From positions 283,393 through 347,392 of the IMG/VR virus record IMGVR_UViG_3300042879_006196: 64,000 bases of DNA. One strand, written 5' to 3'. This document shows positions 19,797-59,315 of the stretch, piece by piece (position 1 is the first letter of the stretch; each line of letters begins with the position of its first letter). The notes under the pieces were generated by a model, which was not told the DNA's origin, made no database searches, and worked only from the letters and a program-made list of their open reading frames with translations. The translations under genes and the position numbers were made by a program.

Positions 19797-22622
19797 GTGT
19801 GGTATCGGTATTGCAGATTAATTATAGCGAAAAAAGAACATATAATTGCCAAAATTTACAATCATTTTAGGGAAGAATATGAAAATTCTCCAAATGATTT
19901 ATATATTCTTGATGATATAAAAGAAAAATTATTAAAATTAGATGAAATAAATTTTTTTGATCAAAACATAATTGAATTAAACACTGATAAAAACACTAAT
20001 AAAAAAACTGTTAATTTTTTAGGAAAAGTTTGTGAAAGTTTAACTGATTTAGCAGAAGCTGTTGATCCCGTGTACGATGAAGTAATGTACAAAAAAGAAT
20101 ATAAACAAGAAAAGAAAAAACAACAAAGTTTACAAGCTTTAGAGTTTATTGCTGGAGAAGTTCAAGTATATCCCTGCAATGATGTCAATGATACAATAAG
20201 ATTTGGAAGGGGTACCACTTGGTGCATTTCTCAACCTGGTACAGGTATTAAAGCTTATAACTCATACAGACTTAATCACCAATCTACTTTTTACTATGTG
20301 CAAGATGGAACAAGAACAGACAATTTGAAAAGAGTGATGGTAGATATGCAAGCAAACGGTGTTGTCAAACTCACTGATTTTGGTAACACCACTGGTACAA
20401 TAGCTGAATTTGGTACAGATTGGCAAGCATATTTTGACTATTTGAAAGAAGAAAAAGAAGTAGATATTTCTCAATTTGTTAATAAACCATTAACAGAAGA
20501 AGAAAAAAAAGAAATCAATACACTTAGTGAAAGAAACACCGATTACGAATGGTTTAAAAAATTATCATCAGATTATAAATCTAAATATATTGGCATGGGT
20601 CATCTTTTGTCTGATGATCAACTAAGATATATTTTGAAAAGTTCTTTGAAAGACATTTTAATTCGGGAGTACTTGAATACAGGTACCTGTATTACAGAAA
20701 GCCAAAAAAATATGTTATTTACAAATAATCAATACAAAAATACTTATGAGTTTAGAAGAACAAATTATATTAATGAAATAAAAGCACAAGTTACTGAAGA
20801 TTACAAACTTAAAAATTTAGCACTGGGTTCAAATGATTTCGATTTAATCACAGAACTTATAAATGAAGGAAAAATTACAAAAGACCAATTCATGAAAGTT
20901 CAGTCTCCTGAAATGTTCTTTTTTTTGATGGATCAAGATTTTGATAAAAAGCGTTTAGTTGAATCTAATGCAGAACATAATTTTACAATTGACTATTTAA
21001 GTTCATTGCCTGCAAACGAGAGCAAAAATCTTTTATCTGGGGTTCTTTTAAGTAATCTGGCTGCAATTAGAAAACTTTATGCTAATGGTATGATAACTAG
21101 CAATAATATAAATTGGTATGCCGTATTTATATGGAATTATGGATTTGAATTTTCAGATATCGAATTGTTTAGTAACTTGTATAAACAAAGTGTTTTTCAG
21201 GAAGATATCGATCAAAAATTGAAACAAACTGAAGTTAAAACTCAATATAAAGCAGCTTTTTACCTTTCCAATAATATTAAAACAGATAAACCAATTGATT
21301 TCGCAACTATATTATCTATAGGTATTGATGAAAAGCTTAAAGCTTTTTATTATCAATATTTTGATACCTTAACGCCAGATCAAAAAAAATATATTCTTGA
21401 TAGAGTATCTTTTGGTTATGGAAATAATAATTTCTTAATATCATTGGGTAAAAAAATAGATTCTCTTGATGAAAAAGATCTATTTAGAGTCATAAACTCA
21501 GCTGACGCACAAGCAATGTTTGCTTTATCAAAACAACTTGCAAAAAATGATTTGCAAATTTTGATCAACGATGATAAAGCAAGATTCAGTAATCAACTTA
21601 CCATACAATGGCTTTTAAGTAATAATTTTGATGTGCAAGCCAAGAATATGGATTTTGCAGCACTTTTTTCTTCTGATCATGAAATAGCAGATTTTGTTTT
21701 TGAAAAATTTGAAAACTTAAGTAGTGAGGAACAAAAAAAACTGTTTGGTAGCTTTTACGTCCAACCAAAATCTATTAAAGTAGCAAAATATTTATTTGAA
21801 AAAGGCGCATCTTATTTCTTAAGGTTTGTTACATTCGACATCATTGATGCAATAATTAGTTCTATGACTAATCTGCCTTATGAAGCATGGGATAATATTT
21901 CAGGTAATGAAAAAATTTATAACAACAACGAATTTATTATGAAGTATATACCAAATTTAATTGGTAAATTTAGTTTTGCATATAGTGCTCCGTTAAGATT
22001 TTTTGACCTTATCTTTGAGAAATTTAACAATTTTGAACGTAATCAAGATTGGATAGTAAGACAATTTTGTTCTCATAATAAATCTTGCAATGAACAAGTG
22101 GCAGAAAAATATATAAAAAAATATCCTAGCTTAAAAGAAGTTATTATTCAAGCTTTTGTGGATAATTATAGCGGTAAAATTCCTTCAGAAGATTTTATAA
22201 ATAAATATTACGATGAAATTTCAGAATTTATTGGTTATCTTTATCGCTATAAAAATTTTACTGAAGATTACATAAGAAAATTTGCTGACAAAATAAAATT
22301 TGATAGAGTTCTTATGTCAACAAAAAATTTATCAAATGAATTTTTTGTTGATTTTGAAGAAAAAATTGCTGAGATTCCTGATCGTGAAATGAATGATATA
22401 CTAGAAAATACAACGTTACCTGAATATTTTTTGAGTAAATTTGCACATAAATTTAATGATTATAATTGGCGCCAAATATCAAGAAAATTTCAATTATCTG
22501 AAAATTTTATTATAAAATTTGCAGATAAATTAGATTTTCAATATATTAAATATAATGAAAATATTCCAGACGTAGTGAAACAAAATTTAAAAGTAAAAGG
22601 ATATGCAGTTGATATATTATGA
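19797..22622 (+). CDS. Large MWY-initiated protein with a WCI domain and C-terminal ~22-aa helical repeats
   Basis: GTTWCISQPG..YNSYR..TFYYV; repeated LSExFIxKFxDK units. Confidence 0.65.
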   Translation: MWYRYCRLIIAKKEHIIAKIYNHFREEYENSPNDLYILDDIKEKLLKLDEINFFDQNIIELNTDKNTNKKTVNFLGKVCESLTDLAEAVDPVYDEVMYKKEYKQEKKKQQSLQALEFIAGEVQVYPCNDVNDTIRFGRGTTWCISQPGTGIKAYNSYRLNHQSTFYYVQDGTRTDNLKRVMVDMQANGVVKLTDFGNTTGTIAEFGTDWQAYFDYLKEEKEVDISQFVNKPLTEEEKKEINTLSERNTDYEWFKKLSSDYKSKYIGMGHLLSDDQLRYILKSSLKDILIREYLNTGTCITESQKNMLFTNNQYKNTYEFRRTNYINEIKAQVTEDYKLKNLALGSNDFDLITELINEGKITKDQFMKVQSPEMFFFLMDQDFDKKRLVESNAEHNFTIDYLSSLPANESKNLLSGVLLSNLAAIRKLYANGMITSNNINWYAVFIWNYGFEFSDIELFSNLYKQSVFQEDIDQKLKQTEVKTQYKAAFYLSNNIKTDKPIDFATILSIGIDEKLKAFYYQYFDTLTPDQKKYILDRVSFGYGNNNFLISLGKKIDSLDEKDLFRVINSADAQAMFALSKQLAKNDLQILINDDKARFSNQLTIQWLLSNNFDVQAKNMDFAALFSSDHEIADFVFEKFENLSSEEQKKLFGSFYVQPKSIKVAKYLFEKGASYFLRFVTFDIIDAIISSMTNLPYEAWDNISGNEKIYNNNEFIMKYIPNLIGKFSFAYSAPLRFFDLIFEKFNNFERNQDWIVRQFCSHNKSCNEQVAEKYIKKYPSLKEVIIQAFVDNYSGKIPSEDFINKYYDEISEFIGYLYRYKNFTEDYIRKFADKIKFDRVLMSTKNLSNEFFVDFEEKIAEIPDREMNDILENTTLPEYFLSKFAHKFNDYNWRQISRKFQLSENFIIKFADKLDFQYIKYNENIPDVVKQNLKVKGYAVDIL

Positions 22623-23132
22623 GCTCAAAATATGCTTTTTAAATTTATCTAAATCATCTTTGAAATATAAATTAAATATGGGGATTTTTTTATTCTTAGC
22701 TATTCTTAAAGCTTGCCCTGTTCCCCCTTGCCAATTTTCTTCATCATCTACTTCACAATAGCAGATAATAAAATCAGATTTTGTTCGGCAATTTTTACCA
22801 AGCACTTGATATGTGTTTCTCGCCATTAGTTTTTGTACGCCTTCACTTGTGCCAAATAAGTTTGGATGAAATTGAAAAGCAATTTCATAAGCTTTTTCAC
22901 ATTGTGCGTAGAGGTCAGAATTATTTCCATTGAAACCTTTCCAGGGGAGATAAATTTCTTTGAGCCCACAGGCTTTATCACAGCCTTTTTCAAATGCTTT
23001 ATCAGCTCCATCAGCCCCTCCTGATCTTAAAACATAACCTTTTTTAGCTAAAACAGCGCCAAGTTTTTCCATTATAACAAGAACGTTTTCTGGTGTTGAT
23101 CTTGACCCTATTCCTGCATAATATTTTTCCAT
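22617..23132 (-). CDS. SLOG/DprA-like nucleotide-binding protein
   Basis: YAGIGSR, LRSGGADGAD.AFE, ARN, GGTGQA. Confidence 0.8.
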   Translation of the reverse strand: MEKYYAGIGSRSTPENVLVIMEKLGAVLAKKGYVLRSGGADGADKAFEKGCDKACGLKEIYLPWKGFNGNNSDLYAQCEKAYEIAFQFHPNLFGTSEGVQKLMARNTYQVLGKNCRTKSDFIICYCEVDDEENWQGGTGQALRIAKNKKIPIFNLYFKDDLDKFKKHILSS

Positions 23133-23219: not shown

Positions 23220-23789
23220 ATGAAAAAAAAAATTTTTAAAATAATCTTTACTGTTGTAACCGTTTTTATGCTGGCATCAATTTCTTTTGCACAATTCGAT
23301 GGAGCTGATAAAAAACTCACTGTGGAATACAAAAATTCAGATGTGAGAGAAGTGGTGATTTCAATTCTGAAATCCGTAAATTTGAGCTACACTCTTTTTC
23401 CAGAAGTACAAGGACAAGTGACTGTATCAGTAAAGGACGTGCCTCTTTTAACAGTATTAGAGAACATTCTTCAGCAAGTGGACTGTACATGGTCTTATGC
23501 AGGTGGAGTTGTTGTTATCAAAAAAAGAGAATTACCTCCTACCGAACCACAATCTCAAGAAATTACTTCAACACAATCTGGAAAACCTGCAAAAGTAATC
23601 AGAAAACTTATCATTCGCAGTAGTGACCCTTTGCTTATTGCTATGCTGTTAAGTGGAAGCCAAAATTATTTTGGTTCACCTGAGCCAACACAATCTTCAT
23701 ATTCTTTTGGTGGCTTTGGAAACAATATGATGGGTGGTTTTGGTGGATTTAGTGGGCAGGGCGGTTTTGGAGGAAATAACCTTAGATAA
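23220..23789 (+). CDS. Exported secretin N-terminal (STN/N0-like) domain protein lacking a secretin barrel
   Basis: Signal peptide; DVREVV..I...VQGQVTVSVKDVPL..LENIL; Gly-rich tail. Confidence 0.65.
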   Translation: MKKKIFKIIFTVVTVFMLASISFAQFDGADKKLTVEYKNSDVREVVISILKSVNLSYTLFPEVQGQVTVSVKDVPLLTVLENILQQVDCTWSYAGGVVVIKKRELPPTEPQSQEITSTQSGKPAKVIRKLIIRSSDPLLIAMLLSGSQNYFGSPEPTQSSYSFGGFGNNMMGGFGGFSGQGGFGGNNLR

Positions 23790-23790
23790 A

Positions 23791-23815
23791 AAAGGCTTCC
23801 ATTATGGAAGCCTTT
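23791..23815. terminator. Bidirectional intrinsic terminator
   Basis: AAAGGCTTCCA-tta-TGGAAGCCTTT between convergent genes. Confidence 0.8.
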
Positions 23816-23819
23816 CAAA

Positions 23820-24143
23820 TTAGTTGTTTAGATTAGCTATCTCTTCAGCTTGCTCTAATGTATAAGAATCAACTAAGCCAAGTGCTGGTTGTTCCAGAGC
23901 TTCTGTCGCAGCTTTAACTTTTTCAAGTTCTGACAATATATTACTTAAGTGTTTTTCCACTTCTGTAAGTTTTGTCTCAGACCATGTGCCAGCTCTTCCC
24001 ATTAAAAAGTTCAAATTCATGAATTGTACTTTGTTGTGGAATTTGTTGACAATAATATCTATCTTGTAAACGTGCAAAAGCACTTCTTTTAATTTTTCGA
24101 CTTTTAATTTTTCGTCCATGTTTATTTTATACATTTTTTTCAA
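23820..24143 (-). CDS. Hypothetical protein
   Basis: 107-aa ORF ending at the terminator. Confidence 0.55.
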   Translation of the reverse strand: MKKMYKINMDEKLKVEKLKEVLLHVYKIDIIVNKFHNKVQFMNLNFLMGRAGTWSETKLTEVEKHLSNILSELEKVKAATEALEQPALGLVDSYTLEQAEEIANLNN

Positions 24144-24210
24144 AAGCTTAATTGTTTCTTAACATAATTAAGAAGATTATAGTAACCAAAAAATGTAAAT
24201 AAATAATGTT

Positions 24211-25242
24211 ATGCTAAAATCTAAAGCTTTCACTTTAATAGAGCTTTTGGTGGTAATTGCCATCATAGCCATTCTCGCCGCAATTCTGTTCCCTGTTTTC
24301 GCTCAAGCAAAATTAGCCGCTAAAAAAGCGTCTGATTTAAGCAATGTTAAACAAATGGGTCTTGGTATTACTTTATATACAGGTGACAATGATGATATGT
24401 ATCCTTCTGCTTACTATCACAGAGCTTTTAATCCTGCTCTTGGTGGAACCAACGCTGGATATATTCACTGGTCAGGCATGGTGATGCCTTATGTTAAAAA
24501 CGTACAAATGTTTGTATCACCTGGTGATACCATTCGTGGTCATGCTCCAACATGTTTCTCTTCAGCTGATAACAATAGTGGCGCAGGTGCTCCAGGCGGA
24601 CAGGCAGCAAACGTATGTACAGCTAACCCTGCAATTGTTCCACCTCAATTTGTACGAGGTGGTGCGATTGTGGATGAGCAAGTTCCCCGCATTTCTTACA
24701 CTGTTAATTCTTTGGTAATTCCTAGATACCGAAATATTGGTGATGTCAATAGAGGCATTTCTTTGGTGAGCCAAACTCAGTTGGATAATGTTTCAAACAT
24801 CATCTTGCTTGCTGGATTTACAAGAAATCTTCCCTGTCTTTCATCAGCTTCTATCACTTCAACGACTAGAAGTGCATCGCACCGATCAACCAATGCAGTC
24901 ACAAGAGACTCAGCAAATACTCAGGTTTATTTTGGTAGTCAAGAAGACGGGGCTTCACGACCTTCTAGTTTGTTTGCTCTGAATTGGAACAATCTTGCTT
25001 CTAGTAATATTTTCAATTTATGTGCAACAAATCCACGAACAGATTACCCTCTCATTGTGTATCATGGTTATAACAATTGGAATAACTCTGGTGATAATTA
25101 TGGCATGGCAGATGGTTCTGCTAAATATCGACCATTCAGACAAACAATTGCTCCAACAAACTATCTTTGGGGGACAAGAGCGTATACTGATGGCAATCTT
25201 CCTATCTTAGATCCAGTGTCTGGCTTGCCAGTGCAAGGTTAA
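24211..25242 (+). CDS. Prepilin-type N-terminal cleavage/methylation protein (DUF1559-like)
   Basis: AFTLIELLVVIAIIAILAAILFPVFAQAK...SNVKQMGL; C-terminal H...NYGMADGSAK. Confidence 0.9.
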   Translation: MLKSKAFTLIELLVVIAIIAILAAILFPVFAQAKLAAKKASDLSNVKQMGLGITLYTGDNDDMYPSAYYHRAFNPALGGTNAGYIHWSGMVMPYVKNVQMFVSPGDTIRGHAPTCFSSADNNSGAGAPGGQAANVCTANPAIVPPQFVRGGAIVDEQVPRISYTVNSLVIPRYRNIGDVNRGISLVSQTQLDNVSNIILLAGFTRNLPCLSSASITSTTRSASHRSTNAVTRDSANTQVYFGSQEDGASRPSSLFALNWNNLASSNIFNLCATNPRTDYPLIVYHGYNNWNNSGDNYGMADGSAKYRPFRQTIAPTNYLWGTRAYTDGNLPILDPVSGLPVQG

Positions 25243-25245
25243 TAA

Positions 25246-25267
25246 AAAGCCCTCAATTGAGGGCTTT
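25246..25267. terminator. Bidirectional terminator/palindrome
   Basis: AAAGCCCTCAATTGAGGGCTTT between convergent genes. Confidence 0.75.
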
Positions 25268-25721
25268 AAGCATCTTGAAAAACTAATTTTTGAATTCCAT
25301 CTTCCTTAACTGTTCCAACCTGAACAGCACCTGCAGAATTTATAAGTTGGTCTGCTCCTCCAGAAGATCGATTAATTTTTGAGCCATTACATGAAATATA
25401 TGGCAAATCTGGATAACCATTTGATCTCAGCCAATCTTTGAAAGCATTTGCATCTCCTGCGATAAGGTTTCCTCTTTCTCCAAAAACTAATTTTCCATCT
25501 TCAGTGCCGTGTAGCAACCAAATACTCCTTTGTGTTCCATCGCTTGTTTTGATTTGCACTTGTTTAGGTGGGTCATCAGGTCCCATAAAAAACTGACCTC
25601 CTACCAATTCTACTTCAAGCCTTCCTTCACTTCCTGAGGGAATCATTTGCCTATAAGAATTGGGATCTAATTCTTGAACATTAGGATTTTGTGAACTGAG
25701 TTTGCTGAATTTGTACCACAC
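25266..25721 (-). CDS. MWY-initiated hypothetical protein
   Basis: MWYKFSK; AGG-N31-GTG. Confidence 0.65.
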   Translation of the reverse strand: MWYKFSKLSSQNPNVQELDPNSYRQMIPSGSEGRLEVELVGGQFFMGPDDPPKQVQIKTSDGTQRSIWLLHGTEDGKLVFGERGNLIAGDANAFKDWLRSNGYPDLPYISCNGSKINRSSGGADQLINSAGAVQVGTVKEDGIQKLVFQDA

Positions 25722-25732
25722 AATTTATATTT

Positions 25733-26269
25733 TCAGCTAAAAAAAGTAAAATCCTTGTCGGTAAATTTTTCACATTCTTCAAAAGGTTTACCAAGTTTGT
25801 CTTTATCTGACACAATCTGAGGAAAATCTTTCCAAGGAATGTCAAGACTGTTGTAAAGTAAAGATCTGTCATTTTCTTGACAATAATAATTAGAGCATTT
25901 GTAATAAACCACGCTATTATCTTCTAGCGATTGAAATCCATGTGCAAAGCCTTCTGGAATAAATATAGCCAAATGATTTTCGCTTGATAATTCGATGTCA
26001 AACCATTTACCAAAATAGGGCGATTGCTCTCTTAAATCTACAGCAACATCATATATTTTTCCTGCCAAACAATACACTAATTTTGCTTGTGGAATTTGAA
26101 CTTGATAATGCATGCCTCTAATCACTCCTTGTTTAGAAATTGAACAATTATCTTGAACAAATTTAACAGGAAAAATTTTATCTTTATGCAAAAAAGTTTC
26201 AGTGAATTGTCCTCTATAATCTTGGAAACATTTTAAATTAACTATTTTAATTCCACCAAAAGGCTCCAT
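25733..26269 (-). CDS. rmlB-pathway rmlC: dTDP-4-dehydrorhamnose 3,5-epimerase
   Basis: DYRG.F, RGMHYQ, QAKLV, DVAVDLR, FAHGF, SDKD. Confidence 0.92.
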   Translation of the reverse strand: MEPFGGIKIVNLKCFQDYRGQFTETFLHKDKIFPVKFVQDNCSISKQGVIRGMHYQVQIPQAKLVYCLAGKIYDVAVDLREQSPYFGKWFDIELSSENHLAIFIPEGFAHGFQSLEDNSVVYYKCSNYYCQENDRSLLYNSLDIPWKDFPQIVSDKDKLGKPFEECEKFTDKDFTFFS

Positions 26270-26319
26270 ACACTATTTATACACCAGGAAAATATTGATG
26301 ATAAGTTTAAATTAATAAA

Positions 26320-27114
26320 ATGGATAGAATTTCAATGATCAAATGCTGCAATGATCTTGATAAAAATGGTTTTTTTAAAGAATCTGAGTTGATAGAAAAT
26401 TTCATAAAACTATCCGCTATGCCTTTAGGAAATGATTTAAAAGATACAATCAGGAATTTATTACCTCCCTCTGCAAAAGCAATCTTTGATAAATACTTAC
26501 CTCCTAAAAAAACACAAGCCCCTGCACCAAAACAAAACCAAAAATCACTAAGAGAGAAAATATTACAACAAAGAAACAATCCTCAAATACCTTGGGGTAA
26601 TTATGGCAAATTTAAAACAAAGCTTGAAAAGTATGAGGGCGGTTTATCTAATAGACCACTTAAAGATGACCCTGGTGGATTAACTAACAAAGGCGTGACA
26701 GATGTAACATATAACAGATGGAGAAAAAGTAAAGGGCTAGGATATAAATCTGTTAGATATATCACTGACGAAGAAGTTAATCTTATCACTAAAAACTTAT
26801 ATTGGGATCAAATTAAAGGCGATTTTATTCCTCATCCAATTGCAATAGTTTTAGCAGATTGGAAATTCCTTGGTGGTAGTCCTGTACAAGAATTACAAAA
26901 ATTGATTGGAGTAAGCCCTGATGGTTTAATGGGCACAGCAACTGTGAAAGCTTTGTGGAGATACACTGGTCGTGATAATGAAAAAGCTAAACAGCTTGCT
27001 TTGAAATTATTAGATTCAAGAGAAAAATATATGAGAAAACTTCCAAATGCAGCCACTAATGGAGGTTGGTGGATAAGATTGGATGACATGAGAAAAACAA
27101 TTAGGGCTTTGTAG
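26320..27114 (+). CDS. GH108-type lysozyme with an N-terminal phage helical motif
   Basis: EGG...DDPGGLTNKGVT, YWD, DG.MG..T, GW..R. Confidence 0.8.
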   Translation: MDRISMIKCCNDLDKNGFFKESELIENFIKLSAMPLGNDLKDTIRNLLPPSAKAIFDKYLPPKKTQAPAPKQNQKSLREKILQQRNNPQIPWGNYGKFKTKLEKYEGGLSNRPLKDDPGGLTNKGVTDVTYNRWRKSKGLGYKSVRYITDEEVNLITKNLYWDQIKGDFIPHPIAIVLADWKFLGGSPVQELQKLIGVSPDGLMGTATVKALWRYTGRDNEKAKQLALKLLDSREKYMRKLPNAATNGGWWIRLDDMRKTIRAL

Positions 27115-28104: not shown

Positions 28105-29064
28105 ATGATTGAAGCCGTTGATGTAATTTTTGGTGCTTCTTGGGGAGACGAAGGTAAAGGGAAAATCTCCTCAAGAATTGCCAAAAACTATGATTATGTT
28201 TGTAGGTTTAATGGTGGCTCAAATGCTGGTCATACATTTTATGTCAATGACAAAAAAGTAATCACTCATGTCATCCCATCAGGAATTGCATTTAATATAC
28301 CATCAATCATTGGACCAAATTGTGTAGTTTGCATTGAAGAATTCTTTGCAGAGCTATCATATTTAGAGCATTTAGGCTTTAATCCTAAGCTAGTGAAGAT
28401 AAGTCCAAAAGCACATATTGTCACGCCTCATCATAAAGAACAAGATGCTAATTATTATTCAAAATTAATAGGTACCACTTCTAAAGGCATTGGTTTGTGT
28501 TATGCTGACAAGGCGCTTAGAACAGGTGTAAGAGCAGATACTGTTATGCCAAAGGAGTATCTCTGGGATGAAAAACTTGATGGTCATGTTCTTTGTGAGG
28601 GCGCACAATCGTTCTGGTTAGATATTAATCAGGGTTCATATCCTTATGTTACATCTTCAGAGTGTTTGCCATATGCTTCTTGTTCGTTGGGATTTTCTCC
28701 CAAAAAAATTCGTGACATTATAGCAGTAGCAAAAATGTATGATACACGATCTGGAGTGGATCCTTATTTTGATTTAGACGATGAAGAGACACAGTTGGTG
28801 GCTAAATTAGGAAATGAGTACGGAACCACCACAGGAAGAGCAAGACAGGTAAAATGGTTAAATCTTGATAAGTTGTCTTATGCTATTGAGAAAGCTGGCG
28901 CAAATATATTATATATGAACAAAGGCGATATTTTAGAAGAAGCAAAAATCTTTAAATTATATCATAATTCAGAATTATTGTCTTTCAGCGATATAGAAGA
29001 AATGAAAGCTTTTATACTTGAAAAAGTCAAAGAAGTTCAGATTGTGTGGGATTTTCAAGCTTAA
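28105..29064 (+). CDS. purA: Adenylosuccinate synthetase (short form)
   Basis: WGDEGKGK, GGSNAGHT, GTTSKGIG, EGAQ, YPYVTSS, EYGTTTGR. Confidence 0.92.
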   Translation: MIEAVDVIFGASWGDEGKGKISSRIAKNYDYVCRFNGGSNAGHTFYVNDKKVITHVIPSGIAFNIPSIIGPNCVVCIEEFFAELSYLEHLGFNPKLVKISPKAHIVTPHHKEQDANYYSKLIGTTSKGIGLCYADKALRTGVRADTVMPKEYLWDEKLDGHVLCEGAQSFWLDINQGSYPYVTSSECLPYASCSLGFSPKKIRDIIAVAKMYDTRSGVDPYFDLDDEETQLVAKLGNEYGTTTGRARQVKWLNLDKLSYAIEKAGANILYMNKGDILEEAKIFKLYHNSELLSFSDIEEMKAFILEKVKEVQIVWDFQA

Positions 29065-33702: not shown

Positions 33703-35009
33703 ATTGCAGTAATTAGAAAATATTCTACTATTTTTCTAAAACATGTAGGTGATAGCAAATATTAAACTGTAAAAGAACTATATGTTGAAAGCATATAAGT
33801 TTTTGATAAAACCTGCGAAAGAGCAAAGTGAGATGTTTGAAAAACATTTTGGCGCTGCTAGGTTTGTCTATAACTGGGGCTTAGAACAAAAAACAAAATC
33901 TTATCAAGAAGGAAAGAAAACATTGACTTTTCTTGGATTAGGACCAGAACTTGTTAAACTTAAAAAAGAAAACATCTGGATGAAAGAAGTTAATAGCCAA
34001 TCACTATTGGCTTCTCTAAAGAATTTAGACAATGCCTACACTAGATTCTTTCGAGAAAAGAAAGGATTTCCTAAATTTAAATCAAAATACAATCCAAAAC
34101 AATCCTTCCAATGCCCTCAACATTGTACTGTAGATTTTGAAAAAGGATTGCTAAATATCCCTAAAGTTAAAAATATCAAAACTGTATTCCACAGACAATT
34201 TGAAGGAGATATCAAAACTGTAACGATTTCTAAAGTGCCTTCTGGAAAATATTATGTTTCTATCCTTGTGGAAGATGGAAAGTCTTTACAAATTAAACCC
34301 AAACTTGACAGAAACGATGCAATAGGTATTGACATGGGATTGAAAGATTTTGTAGTTACTTCAGATGGAGATAAGATTGCTAATCCGAAATATCTCAGAA
34401 AATCCGAAGAACGACTTGCAAGAAGACAAAGAAAATTAAGTGTAAAAAAGAAAGGGAGCAATAATAGAAATAAACAACGTAAAAAAGTAGCAAAGCTACA
34501 TAAAAAAATAGCTAATCAAAGAAAAGACTTTCTGCATAAAGTATCTCATCAAATAGTTCACAAGAATCACGGAACGATTTGTGTTGAAGACTTGTGTGTT
34601 AAAGGGATGGTCAAAAATAGAAAATTAGCTAAATCAATATCTGATGCAGGATGGGGAATGTTCTATAATTTTCTGAAATACAAATCAGAATGGCATGGAA
34701 AGAATTTCCTTGATATTGGAAGATTTGAACCATCGAGCAAGATGTGTTCAGTCTGCGGGAATATCAAATCAGATTTGACATTATCTGATAGAGAATGGAT
34801 ATGTTCTAAATGTGAAACAAAACACGATAGAGATATCAATGCTTCAATTAATATTCGGAACATGGCATTCACTAATCAGAATTTGGTAAGATGTATAGGA
34901 CTGGAACAGCCCGAATCAACGCCTGTGGAGAAGAAAGCTCTGGTTAGAAATAATGAAACTATCTTCTGCGAAGCAGGAAGCCTCACCCCTTGTGGGTGAG
35001 GTAGTTCAC
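33668..35009 (+). mobile_element. TnpB-only IS200/IS605 (IS1341-type) element 1
   Basis: Left-end hairpin CCCCA..TGGGG; right-end hairpin CCTCACCC..GGGTGAGG followed by TAGTTCAC; ends shared with element 2. Confidence 0.85.
33782..34999 (+). CDS. tnpB: RNA-guided endonuclease TnpB
   Basis: GIDMG, VEDL, CSVC..CSKC, DRDINAS; RuvC triad intact. Confidence 0.95.
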   Translation: MLKAYKFLIKPAKEQSEMFEKHFGAARFVYNWGLEQKTKSYQEGKKTLTFLGLGPELVKLKKENIWMKEVNSQSLLASLKNLDNAYTRFFREKKGFPKFKSKYNPKQSFQCPQHCTVDFEKGLLNIPKVKNIKTVFHRQFEGDIKTVTISKVPSGKYYVSILVEDGKSLQIKPKLDRNDAIGIDMGLKDFVVTSDGDKIANPKYLRKSEERLARRQRKLSVKKKGSNNRNKQRKKVAKLHKKIANQRKDFLHKVSHQIVHKNHGTICVEDLCVKGMVKNRKLAKSISDAGWGMFYNFLKYKSEWHGKNFLDIGRFEPSSKMCSVCGNIKSDLTLSDREWICSKCETKHDRDINASINIRNMAFTNQNLVRCIGLEQPESTPVEKKALVRNNETIFCEAGSLTPCG

Positions 35010-38141: not shown

Positions 38142-38525
38142 GGGGCGCCCAGGCATTCGACAGAAGAGTATGGGTGTGCGTTGCATGTAGTGGGTGATTC
38201 TCCGGCCACTTCAAAAGAGAATCAAAAAATAAATGGCAAAAATGCTAAAAAGAATCGCAGAAATGGCTTTGGCTCTGCCCAAGCTGGCTTTGCAATGGTA
38301 GCCTAAGTGCTTCCTGGGGATACGTACAACCAAGCTAGTAGGGTGTCTATCTCTTAGAATAAAGTCTAGCTAAAAAACATCTATGATCGAATGATGTAAA
38401 AGCGATATGCAGATTGTGTGGATTTGTTATTTGTTCCTAACAATTTAAGAAAAAACAATAAACTAAACATGTAGTAACGTATATGACAGCTATTTTGGAA
38501 AGGGGTTCGACTCCCCTGCGCTCCA
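38142..38525 (+). ncRNA. ssrA: tmRNA (CCA not encoded)
   Basis: GGGGCGC/GCGCTCCA acceptor stem with G3:U70, TTCGAC near the 5' end, T-arm AGGGGTTCGACTCCCCT; tag ORF 38235-38306 GKNAKKNRRNGFGSAQAGFAMVA*. Confidence 0.92.
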
Positions 38526-38599
38526 AACTTTATTAAGGTATTTTCAGAAATACTTAGATTCAAATAGGTTCAAATTGTGAATTTCCTTAATATAGGTTT

Positions 38600-57989: not shown

Positions 57990-59315
57990 GTGAACTACCT
58001 CACCCATAAAGGGAGAGGCTTCCTGTTTCATAGTCGTTAGCAACCTAACAATTCCACAGGCGTTGATTCGGCTTGTTCCAAGCCTATAAATCTCATTAAA
58101 TTTTGACGATTGAATGCCATTTCTTTAATGTTGATAGCAGCATTAATATCACGATCATGTGTAACTCCACAAGGACATTGCCATACACGATCTTTTAATG
58201 TTAATTCTCGATTGACATAGCCACAGATAGAACAAGTTTTTGAACTAGGTTCAAATCTTCCAATATCTAATAACCATTTCCCATTCCATTCACATTTATA
58301 TTCTAAAAATGAACGAAACATTCCCCATCCTACATCGGATATGGATTTTGCTAATCTATGATTTCTGATCATTCCTTGTGTGTTTAAATCTTCTATACAT
58401 AACACATCAATTTGGTTCTCATTAACGAGTTCATGTGAGATTTTATGAAGGAAATCTTTTCTTTGATTAGAAACTTTTTCATGTAACTTAGCGAGTTTTA
58501 CTCGCTGTTTGTTTTGATTATTACTACCTTTATTCATTCTTGAAAATCGACGTTGCATTCGTTTTAATTTTTCTTCTGACTTTTTAAGGAAACGTGGATT
58601 ATTAATTTTGTCACCTTCCGACGTAATAACAAAATGTGTCAATCCAAGATCAACACCTATAGCTCTGTCTTTGTTGAGTTCTGGTTTAGCAGGAATATTT
58701 TCATCAATTTCAACTAATATAGAAGCATAATATTTTCCAGTAGATGATTTACTAATTGTAATTGATTTAACTTTTCCTTCAAAATGACGATGCAAAACAG
58801 CTTTAATATTTTTAGCTTTAGGAATTGAAATTGTATTTAATTCAAAATCCACAACACACGATTGAGGATTCATAAATGAAGACTTACTGAATTTCTTGCT
58901 TTTAAATTTTGGAAATCCTTTCTTTTCTTTAAAGAATCTACTAAATGCAGAATCCAAATTAGCAGTTACAGCTTGTAACGCTTGTGAATTAACATTTGTC
59001 AGCCAATGGTGTTCTTCTTTAAGTTCTTTAAGTTTTGCATCCATTTCAAATTTAGTTAATTTCTGTTTTCCATTCACATACATTTCTGTTTTCAGTTCAA
59101 GAAAATAATTATATACAAATCTCGCACAACCAAAAGAACTTTCAATTAATTGAATTTGCTCTTGATTAGGTTTGATTCTATACTTATATGCCTTAAACAT
59201 ATAAATAATTTCTGCTTATTTTCTAGTCACACCTATTTTTCGACTAGAAATTTTATAATATTTTTTAATAATTCAGCAATTCATCCCCACTGACGAGCAG
59301 ATGGGGCTTTCTTGC
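57990..59315 (-). mobile_element. TnpB-only IS200/IS605 element 2
   Basis: Same left- and right-end hairpins and GTAGTTCAC end as element 1. Confidence 0.85.
58037..59200 (-). CDS. tnpB: RNA-guided endonuclease TnpB
   Basis: GVDLG, IEDL, CSIC..CPC, DRDINAA. Confidence 0.95.
   Translation of the reverse strand: MFKAYKYRIKPNQEQIQLIESSFGCARFVYNYFLELKTEMYVNGKQKLTKFEMDAKLKELKEEHHWLTNVNSQALQAVTANLDSAFSRFFKEKKGFPKFKSKKFSKSSFMNPQSCVVDFELNTISIPKAKNIKAVLHRHFEGKVKSITISKSSTGKYYASILVEIDENIPAKPELNKDRAIGVDLGLTHFVITSEGDKINNPRFLKKSEEKLKRMQRRFSRMNKGSNNQNKQRVKLAKLHEKVSNQRKDFLHKISHELVNENQIDVLCIEDLNTQGMIRNHRLAKSISDVGWGMFRSFLEYKCEWNGKWLLDIGRFEPSSKTCSICGYVNRELTLKDRVWQCPCGVTHDRDINAAINIKEMAFNRQNLMRFIGLEQAESTPVELLGC

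What the first reader, a model, noticed from the sequence alone, without database searches (positions are those of the whole stretch)
23220..25242. Barrel-less secretin N-domain plus prepilin-like protein: possible pilus/T2SS interference module and host clue
Seen: an exported STN/N0-like protein with no secretin pore and, 0.4 kb away, an intact prepilin (FTLIELLVVIAIIAILAAILFPVFAQAK), with no ATPase or platform genes in the window. The FPVFAQAK..AKK..DLSN form is typical of Armatimonadota (Fimbriimonadia) pilin-like expansions. Inference: decoy subunits that alter or block host pili (superinfection exclusion), or captured surface functions.
Basis: partly seen in the sequence, partly recalled or inferred. 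Interest (0 to 1): 0.6.

Follow-up and report, generated by a model that had tools for sequence, protein, structure and literature searches.

The report
Phage copies of host pilus parts
A 347-kb lake phage that almost certainly infects Armatimonadota (Fimbriimonadaceae) carries its own copies of two host type IV pilus-related envelope proteins and none of the machinery to assemble them, so it probably re-tools or blocks the host's pilus machine during infection.

Summary
Window 23220-23789 encodes an exported 189-aa protein with a secretin N0/STN domain and no pore domain. Window 24211-25242 encodes an intact 343-aa prepilin-like protein. The whole 347-kb phage has no secretin barrel, ATPase, platform or prepilin peptidase.

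Both genes came from Fimbriimonadaceae hosts and now use phage codon usage. The N0 protein is not a truncated secretin. It is the phage version of a barrel-less paralogue of the PilQ N-terminus, which 62 of 77 Armatimonadota loci encode between pilP and pilQ. The phage copies form one clade, sister to pil-operon copies.

The pilin is a faithful copy of one conserved member of the host's 30-80-member prepilin family: 83% identity and dN/dS 0.04. It sits in an exchangeable slot. A related phage holds a different paralogue there, other relatives hold none, and the DNA shows a cassette swap at the conserved 5' end.

What the genes do is inferred, not shown. Most likely they plug into the host pilus machine and alter or block it (superinfection exclusion). 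Keeping pilus function going during infection is a strong rival. I found no RNA evidence, and the complex prediction gave only weak support.

This is a new variant of the recently described phage-encoded pilus components.

The parts
23220..23789 (+). Gene for the barrel-less PilQ-N-terminus paralogue (189 aa). Signal peptide is residues 1-24 (23220-23291). The N0/STN domain is residues 31-102 (23310-23525). The conserved motif IRKLIIRSSDPLLIAMLL..QNY..PEP is residues 124-160 (23589-23699). A short Gly-rich tail is residues 161-189 (23700-23786).
   Evidence: (architecture shared with 29 relatives; invariant D41 R43 Y57 P61 V63 Q64 G65 V74 L80 Q86).
23820..24143 (-). orf107, a small helical protein of unknown function. 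It lies next to the N0 gene in every relative (41-61% identity) and forms the left edge of the pilin slot.
24141..24320 (+). Conserved 5' anchor of the pilin cassette: the upstream intergenic DNA plus the first ~110 nt of the coding sequence (leader MLKSKA and the hydrophobic alpha1-N helix). Relatives L010 and L191, which carry different pilins, are 85-95% identical in DNA here.
24211..25242 (+). Prepilin-like gene 'pilin1' (343 aa). The leader is residues 1-6, the alpha1 helix is residues 9-59, and the globular pilin-fold domain with large insertions is residues 60-343. The exchangeable part runs from about 24321 to the stop codon.
25266..25721 (-). orf151, unknown function, conserved in relatives (35-71% identity). 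It forms the right edge of the pilin slot; in L008 it lies 18 bp from the orf107 homologue, with no pilin between.
22617..23132 (-). DprA-like/SLOG gene, divergently oriented upstream of the N0 gene and conserved there in relatives (71-81% identity). Its membership in the unit is not shown.

Best explanation
SHOWN. The record is a low-GC (33.6%) jumbo phage of about 347 kb from lake water. Its host-derived genes point to Fimbriimonadaceae (Armatimonadota).

Gene 1 is the phage member of a host family that copies the N-terminal half of PilQ: signal peptide, N0 domain, linker, a beta-alpha motif and a Gly-rich stretch. It lacks the N3 and secretin domains. Hosts encode this family between pilP and pilQ, in the order pilM-N-O-P-X-pilQ-aroK-aroB.

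Gene 2 is a near-faithful copy of one conserved member of the host's large prepilin-like (PulG/DUF1559-type) family. It sits in a slot whose globular-domain part is exchanged between phage lineages. A second paralogue lies elsewhere in the phage, at genome 147447-148430.

Both genes are under purifying selection in the phage, and the phage encodes no assembly machinery.

INFERRED. In the infected cell both proteins are exported by the host (Sec and signal peptidase I for gene 1; prepilin peptidase for gene 2) and enter the host type IV pilus machine. The N0 protein would dock on the PilP/PilQ periplasmic ring in place of, or beside, the host's own copy. The pilin would load onto the assembly platform.

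The most likely net effect is that the pilus is changed or shut down. Further phages, or the phage's own progeny, then cannot use it (superinfection exclusion / anti-adsorption). The swappable pilin cassette would match the copy to the particular host strain.

The confidence of 0.45 is for this functional reading. The identity and host origin of the two genes I hold at about 0.9.
For: Identity and origin:
- Family and fold hits for both proteins.
- 77 genome loci are almost all Armatimonadota, and 62 of them lie in the pilMNOP-X-pilQ-aroKB context.
- Host PilQ has its own N0 domain and the same motif, so X is a paralogue and not a split-off piece.
- The phage N0 proteins form one clade (SH-aLRT 100), sister (96) to pil-operon copies from lake MAGs.
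- The phage pilins form one clade (100) nested among chromosomal host genes that are 80-84% identical.

Selection and amelioration:
- GC3 is 0.24-0.28 in the phage against 0.5-0.7 in hosts.
- dN/dS is 0.044 for the pilin and 0.13-0.19 for N0, against 0.17 for phage RmlC.

Dependence on the host: no secretin, ATPase, platform or peptidase anywhere in 347 kb.

Recurrence:
- The N0 gene is present in every relative found.
- A second, divergent N0 type occurs in two other lake jumbo phages (358 and 300 kb).
- 218 IMG/VR contigs carry prepilin-like genes.
- Cassette swap.

Docking on PilP: the test of the host PilP HR domain with the phage N0 domain gave weak support. The score was 0.53 and the best of 3 controls was 0.00. 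That mark was reached by 58 of 80 solved complexes and 2 of 110 mismatched pairs. At 0.60 or under, only 7 of those 80 solved complexes reached it, as did both mismatches that passed. The runs agree in at least 93% of contacts and the partner pLDDT is at least 76.

The phage tail is shorter and less Gly-rich than the host's: 29-43 aa at 0.36-0.42 Gly, against a median of 66-67 aa at 0.64-0.70.

Precedent: phage FimU and PilA homologues that enter the pilus and block adsorption (PMC12952977).
Against: - There is no functional or expression evidence. No RNA run holds the locus, and the two runs labelled 'RNA?' are probably DNA.
- The pilin is conserved like its host orthologue, with only 14 scattered phage-specific substitutions. 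The known exclusion pilins (P-FimU) are highly diverse.
- The second phage N0 type (G005) keeps a long Gly-rich tail, so tail shortening is not general.
- The function of the host N0-only protein and of the host prepilin family is unknown (PMC10632474, PMC4072686).
- The host orthologue of the pilin is not in a pilus operon.
- The complex score is weak. It may also reflect memory of the solved GspC-GspD and PilP-PilQ complexes.
Confidence: 0.45

Rival explanations
1. Maintenance or boost (auxiliary-gene model). The phage supplies fresh copies of host pilus-machine parts so that a pilus-dependent function stays active through a long jumbo-phage infection after host gene expression is shut down. 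That function could be attachment to particles, or uptake of DNA or nutrients.
For: - The pilin is constrained as tightly as host orthologues: dN/dS 0.044 against 0.06-0.08.
- Only 14 scattered phage-specific changes separate it from the host clade.
- The N0 protein keeps every invariant residue and motif of the host family.
- The other phage N0 type keeps a full Gly-rich tail.
- A DprA-like gene is a conserved neighbour.
Against: - The N0 protein is only about 40% identical to host copies, on a long stem branch, and its tail is halved.
- The pilin is dispensable: one phage lineage lacks it and another holds a different paralogue.
- No known phage boosts pili in this way.
Confidence: 0.3
2. 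Envelope function unrelated to pili. The N0 protein and the pilin-like protein would act in lysis, outer-membrane disruption or another periplasmic task, as part of an envelope island with RmlC and the GH108 endolysin.
For: - RmlC (25733-26269) and the GH108 endolysin (26320-27114) lie just downstream, and this order is conserved.
- N0-like folds also occur in phage baseplate proteins (rows 32-41).
- The function of the host prepilin family is unknown.
Against: - Direct sequence homology and shared architecture with a host gene embedded in the pil operon.
- A Sec signal peptide rather than a virion or spanin signature.
- Other genes lie between this locus and the endolysin.
Confidence: 0.1
3. 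Artefact: host DNA at the edge of a provirus call, or a chimeric assembly through the repeated prepilin 5' end.
For: - IMG/VR classes the record as 'provirus'.
- Contigs of one run break at the conserved prepilin N-terminus, where GC-rich host-like loose ends attach.
Against: - GC is uniform at 31-39%, and phage-like GC3 holds in both genes.
- Phage genes lie on both sides.
- One 7,952-nt contig spans the whole stretch.
- The same order is found in independent samples at 59-99% identity.
Confidence: 0.02

Closest known systems
Phage-encoded type IV pilus components P-FimU and P-PilA (Sztanko et al., Cell Rep 2026, PMC12952977)
   Same: These are phage-borne homologues of host pilins with no assembly genes of their own. 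They are handled by the host machine. P-FimU is shown to enter the pilus and block adsorption of competing phages. PilA-like genes are also noted in virulent phages.
   Different: - Those are small minor or major pilins of Pseudomonadota and are highly diverse relative to the host. Here the pilin is 343 aa, of the PulG/DUF1559-type expanded family, and 83% identical to its host orthologue.
- No secretin-derived component was reported there.
- No function has been tested here.
N0 domain of secretins PilQ/GspD and its contact with PilP/GspC (PDB 4ar0, 4av2, 3oss, 3ezj)
   Same: The fold is the same (Foldseek E 6e-6 to 2e-3). The host paralogue sits in a pil operon next to a PilP-like lipoprotein. 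The predicted contact with the PilP HR domain has weak support.
   Different: There are no N1-N3 ring domains and no secretin barrel. The protein ends in a Gly-rich tail. It is a separate polypeptide, and the phage encodes it.
Filamentous-phage secretin pIV (PHROG 1012)
   Same: It is a phage-encoded secretin-family sequence. The N-terminal 110 positions of the profile match (E 1.2e-7).
   Different: pIV is a complete pore used for virion extrusion. This protein has no pore, and the phage is a tailed jumbo phage.
DotD, the stand-alone N0-like lipoprotein of the Dot/Icm outer-membrane core (PDB 3ady, 6x62)
   Same: It is a barrel-less protein consisting essentially of an N0-like domain, and it serves as a subunit of a larger envelope machine.
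   Different: It is a lipoprotein of a type IVB secretion system. There is no sequence relation and no Gly-rich tail, and it is not phage-borne.
Small phage inhibitors of type IV pili (for example the Pf phage protein in PMC8764522; Tip and Aqs1, from my own knowledge)
   Same: The proposed outcome is the same: pilus shut-down that prevents superinfection.
   Different: Those are small cytoplasmic or inner-membrane proteins that bind PilB or PilC and are not homologues of pilus parts. Here the proteins are exported mimics of machine parts.
PulG-like/DUF1559 prepilin expansions of Armatimonadota and Planctomycetota (PMC4072686, PMC10632474)
   Same: The N-terminus FTLIELLVVIAIIAILAAILFPVFAQAK is the same. 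Several close homologues carry PF07596. There are dozens of paralogues per host genome (24-36 matches in each of four MAGs and 30 in a complete chromosome).
   Different: The function of the family is unknown in any organism. The window protein itself does not reach PF07596, and the His of the H-X9-DG motif is not at the canonical spacing.

Membership tests
Secretin (PilQ/GspD/pIV) | C-terminal secretin beta-barrel domain (PF00263) | tested here: not met
   There is no PF00263 hit in the protein or anywhere in the 347-kb genome at E<=1. The host neighbour PilQ scores 118 bits.
Secretin (PilQ/GspD/pIV) | N0 (STN) domain at the N-terminus | tested here: met
   PF07660 scores 28.8 bits against a cut-off of 28.4. 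AF2 pLDDT is about 90 over residues 31-102, and the top Foldseek hit is PilQ N0 4ar0 at E 5.8e-6.
Secretin (PilQ/GspD/pIV) | Ring-building N1-N3 domains (PF03958) | tested here: not met
   No Secretin_N hit. Beyond N0 there is only one helix (residues 137-144), modelled at low confidence.
Armatimonadota barrel-less PilQ-N paralogue (unnamed; gene between pilP and pilQ) | Signal peptide ending AxAQ, N0 domain with the family's invariant residues, the RSADPxLIAMLL..QNY..PE motif, and a Gly-rich tail | tested here: met
   Alignment A1: all ten invariant columns and the motif are kept. The tail is present but shorter and poorer in Gly. Identity to host copies is 37-44%.
Armatimonadota barrel-less PilQ-N paralogue (unnamed; gene between pilP and pilQ) | Position inside the pilM-N-O-P-X-pilQ-aroK-aroB cluster | tested here: not met
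   The phage copy lies between a DprA-like gene and orf107, and the phage has no pil genes. Hosts also have 21 'orphan' copies outside the operon. The tree puts the phage clade beside operon copies.
Type IV pilin / pseudopilin (class III signal peptide) | Short basic leader, G/A at -1, F+1, E+5, ~20 hydrophobic residues | tested here: met
   The sequence reads MLKSKA|FTLIELLVVIAIIAILAAILF. PF07963 scores 32.4 bits and TIGR02532 scores 29.2 bits. Ala at -1 is the family norm.
Type IV pilin / pseudopilin (class III signal peptide) | Long alpha1 helix packed on a beta-sheet globular domain | tested here: inconclusive
   The AF2 model has helix 9-59 and pLDDT 92. Foldseek matches only the helix. 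In VIA-align, 16 of the 18 rows are pilins or pseudopilins, but Z is only 2-4.2.
Type IV pilin / pseudopilin (class III signal peptide) | Cleavage and methylation by prepilin peptidase, and assembly by a T4P/T2SS machine | not testable with these tools
   The phage has no peptidase. F. ginsengisoli is reported to have PilD (PMC4072686).
DUF1559 / H-X9-DG prepilin-associated domain (PF07596, TIGR04294) | A match to the family model and the H-X9-DG motif near the C-terminus | tested here: inconclusive
   The window protein has no PF07596 or TIGR04294 hit at E<=0.1. Close homologues (P0010, P0026 and others) carry PF07596. The DG is invariant (D301), but the residue ten positions before it is Asn, not His.
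Phage pilus-component mimics used for superinfection exclusion (P-FimU type) | A phage-encoded homologue of a host pilus structural protein | tested here: met
   for the pilin; for the N0 protein.
Phage pilus-component mimics used for superinfection exclusion (P-FimU type) | Incorporation into the host pilus machine and protection against phage adsorption | not testable with these tools
   The only evidence is a weak in-silico docking result. No culture, no expression data.

The most novel reading that the evidence does not exclude
Lake jumbo phages of Armatimonadota may carry a two-part pilus-retooling locus. One part is a conserved mimic of a barrel-less PilQ-N0 machine subunit. The other is an exchangeable prepilin cassette beside it. 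The globular domain of the cassette would be swapped by recombination at the conserved leader/alpha1 coding end, so that each phage lineage carries the paralogue matching its host strain. This would be a phage-borne analogue of pilin cassette variation. It could set the specificity of superinfection immunity, or reprogram which of the host's dozens of prepilin-like proteins is assembled. It would also give the first handle on the function of the huge PulG/DUF1559 expansions.
Probability: 0.2. Interest if true: 0.8.

Novelty: new variant of a known kind. Interest (0 to 1): 0.6.

Why it matters
- **Host assignment.** It links an uncultured 347-kb phage group from lakes to Armatimonadota on two independent genes. 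I found no paper in the held library that mentions both Armatimonadota and jumbo phages.
- **A new kind of phage-carried pilus part.** Phage-encoded pilus parts were described only recently and only for pilins. This adds a secretin-derived N0 subunit, which has no relative in 50,697 GenBank phage records.
- **An undescribed host feature.** Nearly all Fimbriimonadia encode a barrel-less PilQ N-terminus paralogue between pilP and pilQ. PilP, this protein and PilQ all carry Gly-rich stretches.
- **A route to function.** The faithfully conserved, swappable phage pilin marks a few members of the enigmatic PulG/DUF1559 expansion as functionally important. That makes them a tractable starting point for experiments.

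Tried and rejected
1. 'Split PilQ'. I first read the host STN-only gene as the N0 domain of PilQ encoded separately. I rejected this because an N0-only HMM hits residues ~31-115 of 32 of 49 host secretins (E down to 3e-9). Host PilQ also has the same motif and its own Gly-rich stretch.
2. The apparent STN-secretin fusion in L053 is an assembly N-run artefact.
3. The IMG/VR scan with alignment A1 found no relatives. That search is limited by its patterns. Whole-record searches then found a second N0 type in two jumbo phages.
4. GenBank phages gave no tblastn match to either protein.
5. Foldseek against the PDB matched only the helix of the pilin model. The sequence search of the PDB also matched only the N-terminal helix.
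6. The promoter and terminator scan was at chance level: 14 found against 11.2 expected, with 0 terminators.
7. Expression is unresolved. No RNA run holds the locus, and X19 and X20 are probably DNA, so contigs cannot show transcription.
8. orf107 and orf151 have no Pfam, NCBIfam or PHROG family and no usable Atlas lead.
9. I looked for a conserved operon context of the host pilin orthologue. There is none across L095-L099, and in a complete chromosome it lies 20-45 kb from pilus genes.
10. I considered a solute-binding ('bindosome'-like) reading of the pilin from the Pfam name SBP_bac_10 and a nearby ABC transporter in two host contigs. It is not supported: the model's only structural matches are pilins, and the context is not conserved.
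11. I did not run the large representative-protein search. It carries no names or context and would not have changed the verdict.
Full report
**What the window is.** The window is the last 64 kb (283393-347392) of a 347,392-bp IMG/VR virus record with 33.6% GC and a CheckV completeness of 99%. GC is uniform at 31-39% along the record, with no host-like flank, even though IMG/VR classes it as a 'provirus'.

Genes around the finding are phage genes:
- a DprA-like/SLOG protein (phrog_768, E 4e-62);
- a GH108 endolysin;
- a PurZ-like adenylosuccinate synthetase;
- a DNA polymerase;
- two IS605/TnpB-type transposases.

Near-identical DNA occurs in at least 18 lake-water metagenome runs.

**The observation.** Both ORFs exist as described.

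The 189-aa protein (23220-23789) has these parts:
- a Sec signal peptide;
- an STN/N0 domain (PF07660 28.8 bits against a cut-off of 28.4; TIGR02515 PilQ positions 2-86; PHROG 1012 pIV N-terminus);
- no secretin domain.

Its AF2 model is confident only for residues 31-102. That part matches the N0 domain of Neisseria PilQ best (4ar0, E 5.8e-6), followed by the N0 domains of GspD, XcpQ, EscC and other PilQs, and by DotD.

The 343-aa protein (24211-25242) has a complete class III signal sequence, MLKSKA|FTLIE.... Its model is confident (pLDDT 92, pTM 0.89), with a 51-residue alpha1 helix and a large globular domain. Only the helix matches solved pilins by sequence or by Foldseek. An exhaustive structural alignment lists almost only pilins and pseudopilins, at low Z of 2-4.2.

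The whole phage genome lacks Secretin, T2SSE, T2SSF and Peptidase_A24. It also lacks homologues of host PilM, N, O and P. It does hold a second prepilin-like gene at genome 147447-148430 (-), which is 37% identical to the first.

**Where the N0 protein comes from.** The word search found only 34 relatives. The closest (54-98% identity) are on low-GC phage-like contigs. The rest (28-44%) are 210-260-aa proteins of Fimbriimonas and other Armatimonadota.

All share one architecture:
- a signal peptide ending AxAQ;
- an N0 domain;
- a Pro-rich linker;
- the motif IRRIKIRSADPxLIAMLL..QNY..PE.S;
- a Gly-rich tail.

A scan of one genome per prokaryotic species returned 77 loci. All named ones are Armatimonadota except one 1.8-kb contig labelled 'Actinomycetota'. 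In 62 of the 77 loci the gene lies in the order pilM-pilN-pilO-pilP-X-pilQ-aroK-aroB. The other 15 loci hold orphan copies, single or in tandem.

I first took X for a split-off N0 of PilQ. That is wrong. Host PilQ (530-560 aa) has its own N0 at residues ~31-115, the same motif and its own Gly-rich stretch. So X is a barrel-less paralogue of the N-terminal half of PilQ. One apparent fusion (L053) is an N-run artefact.

In a tree of 89 family members, the six phage copies form one clade (SH-aLRT 100). That clade is sister (96) to the operon copies of four lake MAGs.

The phage tails are shorter and less Gly-rich than host tails: 29-43 aa at 0.36-0.42 Gly, against a median of 66-67 aa at 0.64-0.70. 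A second, divergent N0-only type in two other lake jumbo phages (358 and 300 kb) keeps a long tail.

**Where the pilin comes from.** Thousands of homologues exist. The closest outside the phage relatives are 80-84% identical over the full length. They lie in ordinary bacterial contexts, next to genes such as PPK2, KdpD, IMPDH, sugar ABC transporters, gyrB and ClpB. Named relatives at 60-72% identity are Fimbriimonadaceae.

The phage copies form one clade (100), nested in the host clade of L095, L098 and L099 (98). IMPDH of the L095 organism is 84-87% identical to that of the MAGs that are sister to the phage N0 clade. Both genes therefore point to the same part of Fimbriimonadaceae.

Host genomes hold dozens of paralogues: 24-36 matches in each of four MAGs, and 30 in a complete 2.74-Mb chromosome. 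F. ginsengisoli is reported to have 79 PulG-like genes (PMC4072686). The function of the related DUF1559 expansion is unknown (PMC10632474).

The second phage paralogue has its own host orthologues at ~73% identity.

**These are long-standing, selected phage genes.** GC3 is 0.24 (N0), 0.27 (pilin1) and 0.28 (pilin2). Neighbouring phage genes have 0.20-0.23 and host orthologues 0.50-0.71. Synonymous sites between phage and host copies are saturated.

| Comparison | dN/dS |
|---|---|
| Pilin, phage vs phage (dS 1.4) | 0.044 |
| Pilin, host vs host | 0.06-0.08 |
| N0 protein, phage vs phage | 0.13-0.19 |
| Phage RmlC | 0.17 |

The pilin is 92% identical between two phages whose other proteins are 41-76% identical. 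Only 14 scattered positions separate the phage copies from the host clade.

**Is it a module?** The N0 gene, with orf107 beside it, is present in every relative found. The slot between orf107 and orf151 differs between lineages:

| Slot content | Loci |
|---|---|
| pilin1 | window, L184/L185, L010/L011, L190 |
| a different prepilin paralogue (46% to pilin1; 65-68% to another host group; GC3 0.28) | L191 (a 239.5-kb contig) |
| empty (18 bp between the flanking genes) | L008/L009, L187-L189 |

DNA identity between L010 and L191 follows a cassette pattern:
- 85-95% in the upstream spacer and the first ~110 nt of the gene (leader and hydrophobic helix);
- mostly 40-60% through the globular part;
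- 92% after the stop codon.

That is the signature of a cassette swap anchored on the conserved 5' end. So the two genes were captured separately, the N0 gene long ago and pilin1 later. Even so, the position beside the N0 gene is a recurrent landing site for prepilin genes.

**Mechanism.** The shown facts are these:
- both proteins are host-derived;
- both carry export signals;
- both are under purifying selection;
- neither is accompanied by assembly machinery.

Everything beyond that is inference. N0 domains of secretins contact the HR domain of PilP/GspC (PDB 3oss and 4av2 are among the fold hits). A complex test of the phage N0 domain with the HR domain of the PilP-like lipoprotein from the nearest host clade gave weak support:
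- the score was 0.53, and the best of 3 controls was 0.00;
- that mark was reached by 58 of 80 solved complexes and 2 of 110 mismatched pairs;
- at 0.60 or under, only 7 of those 80 reached it, as did both mismatches that passed;
- the runs agree in at least 93% of contacts, and the partner pLDDT is at least 76;
- like complexes are solved, so the pass may come from memory.

I therefore think both proteins enter the host pilus machine. The direction of the effect is open.

Interference or superinfection exclusion has a direct precedent in phage FimU and PilA homologues (PMC12952977). It also fits the diverged N0 protein with its halved tail. Maintenance of a host function fits the faithful pilin and the full-tailed second N0 type. 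I put interference at about 0.45, maintenance at 0.3, another envelope role at 0.1 and artefact at 0.02. The remainder is unassigned.

**Novelty.** No relative of either protein is in 50,697 GenBank phage records. In IMG/VR, 218 contigs carry a prepilin-like gene, many of them low-GC and very large. Phage-borne pilins are therefore common in this uncultured group, but I found them described only for Pseudomonas and Xylella phages. I found no description of a phage-borne secretin N0 subunit, of the host pilP-X-pilQ arrangement, or of a swappable prepilin cassette in a phage. The literature searches were limited to the held library.

No expression evidence could be obtained.

Noticed in passing
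window 38142-38526 (+): A complete tmRNA gene lies inside the phage genome. ARAGORN gives the tag peptide AKKNRRNGFGSAQAGFAMVA, and Rfam RF00023 scores 108 bits against a gathering score of 47.
   Followed up: partly
window 28105-29064 (+): A PurZ-like adenylosuccinate synthetase (phrog_1211, E 3.5e-62; 76% identical in relative L010). In relatives it is followed by ThyX. This hints at a 2-aminoadenine (Z) genome or another nucleotide rewiring.
   Followed up: no
window 33782-34999 (+) and 58037-59200 (-): Two IS605/TnpB-type transposase genes (phrog_506, E about 1e-132). A related one sits just upstream of the N0 gene in relatives L008 and L009.
   Followed up: no
window 22617-23132 (-): A DprA-like/SLOG gene is a conserved, divergently oriented neighbour of the N0 gene in all relatives that reach that far (71-81% identity). 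DprA, PilQ and pilins together make up the DNA-uptake toolkit, so a link to DNA uptake is conceivable but untested.
   Followed up: partly
window 25733-27114: RmlC (dTDP-4-dehydrorhamnose 3,5-epimerase, 187 bits) and a GH108 endolysin with a peptidoglycan-binding domain lie directly downstream. With the N0 and pilin genes they form a syntenic stretch of envelope-related genes.
   Followed up: no
host loci, e.g. L014 7198-10384: In Armatimonadota the PilP-like lipoprotein, the N0-only protein and PilQ all carry long Gly-rich (GGFGG/GGMGG) low-complexity stretches. This is an unusual shared feature of the periplasmic pilus parts.
   Followed up: partly
G000 genome 147447-148430 (-), outside the window (L002 928-1911): A second phage prepilin-like gene (327 aa, 37% identical to the first). 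It has its own host orthologues at ~73% and phage or metagenome relatives at 81-95%. A third type (37-39% identical) is common in other low-GC viral contigs of up to 358 kb.
   Followed up: partly
L180 (G005, 358 kb) and L181 (G007, 300 kb): Other lake jumbo phages encode a second, divergent N0-only protein (23-27% identity to the window's). In L180, the full-length copy, the architecture is the same and the Gly-rich tail is long; L181 was recovered only as far as the motif.
   Followed up: partly
window 24229-24281: In metagenome contigs, GC-rich loose ends attach at the conserved prepilin N-terminus. Assemblies break here because many host genes and both phage paralogues share this stretch.
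   Followed up: no
whole record G000: IMG/VR classes the record as a 'provirus', but GC is uniform (31-39% per 20 kb) and no host-like flank is visible. It looks like a free jumbo phage genome.
   Followed up: partly
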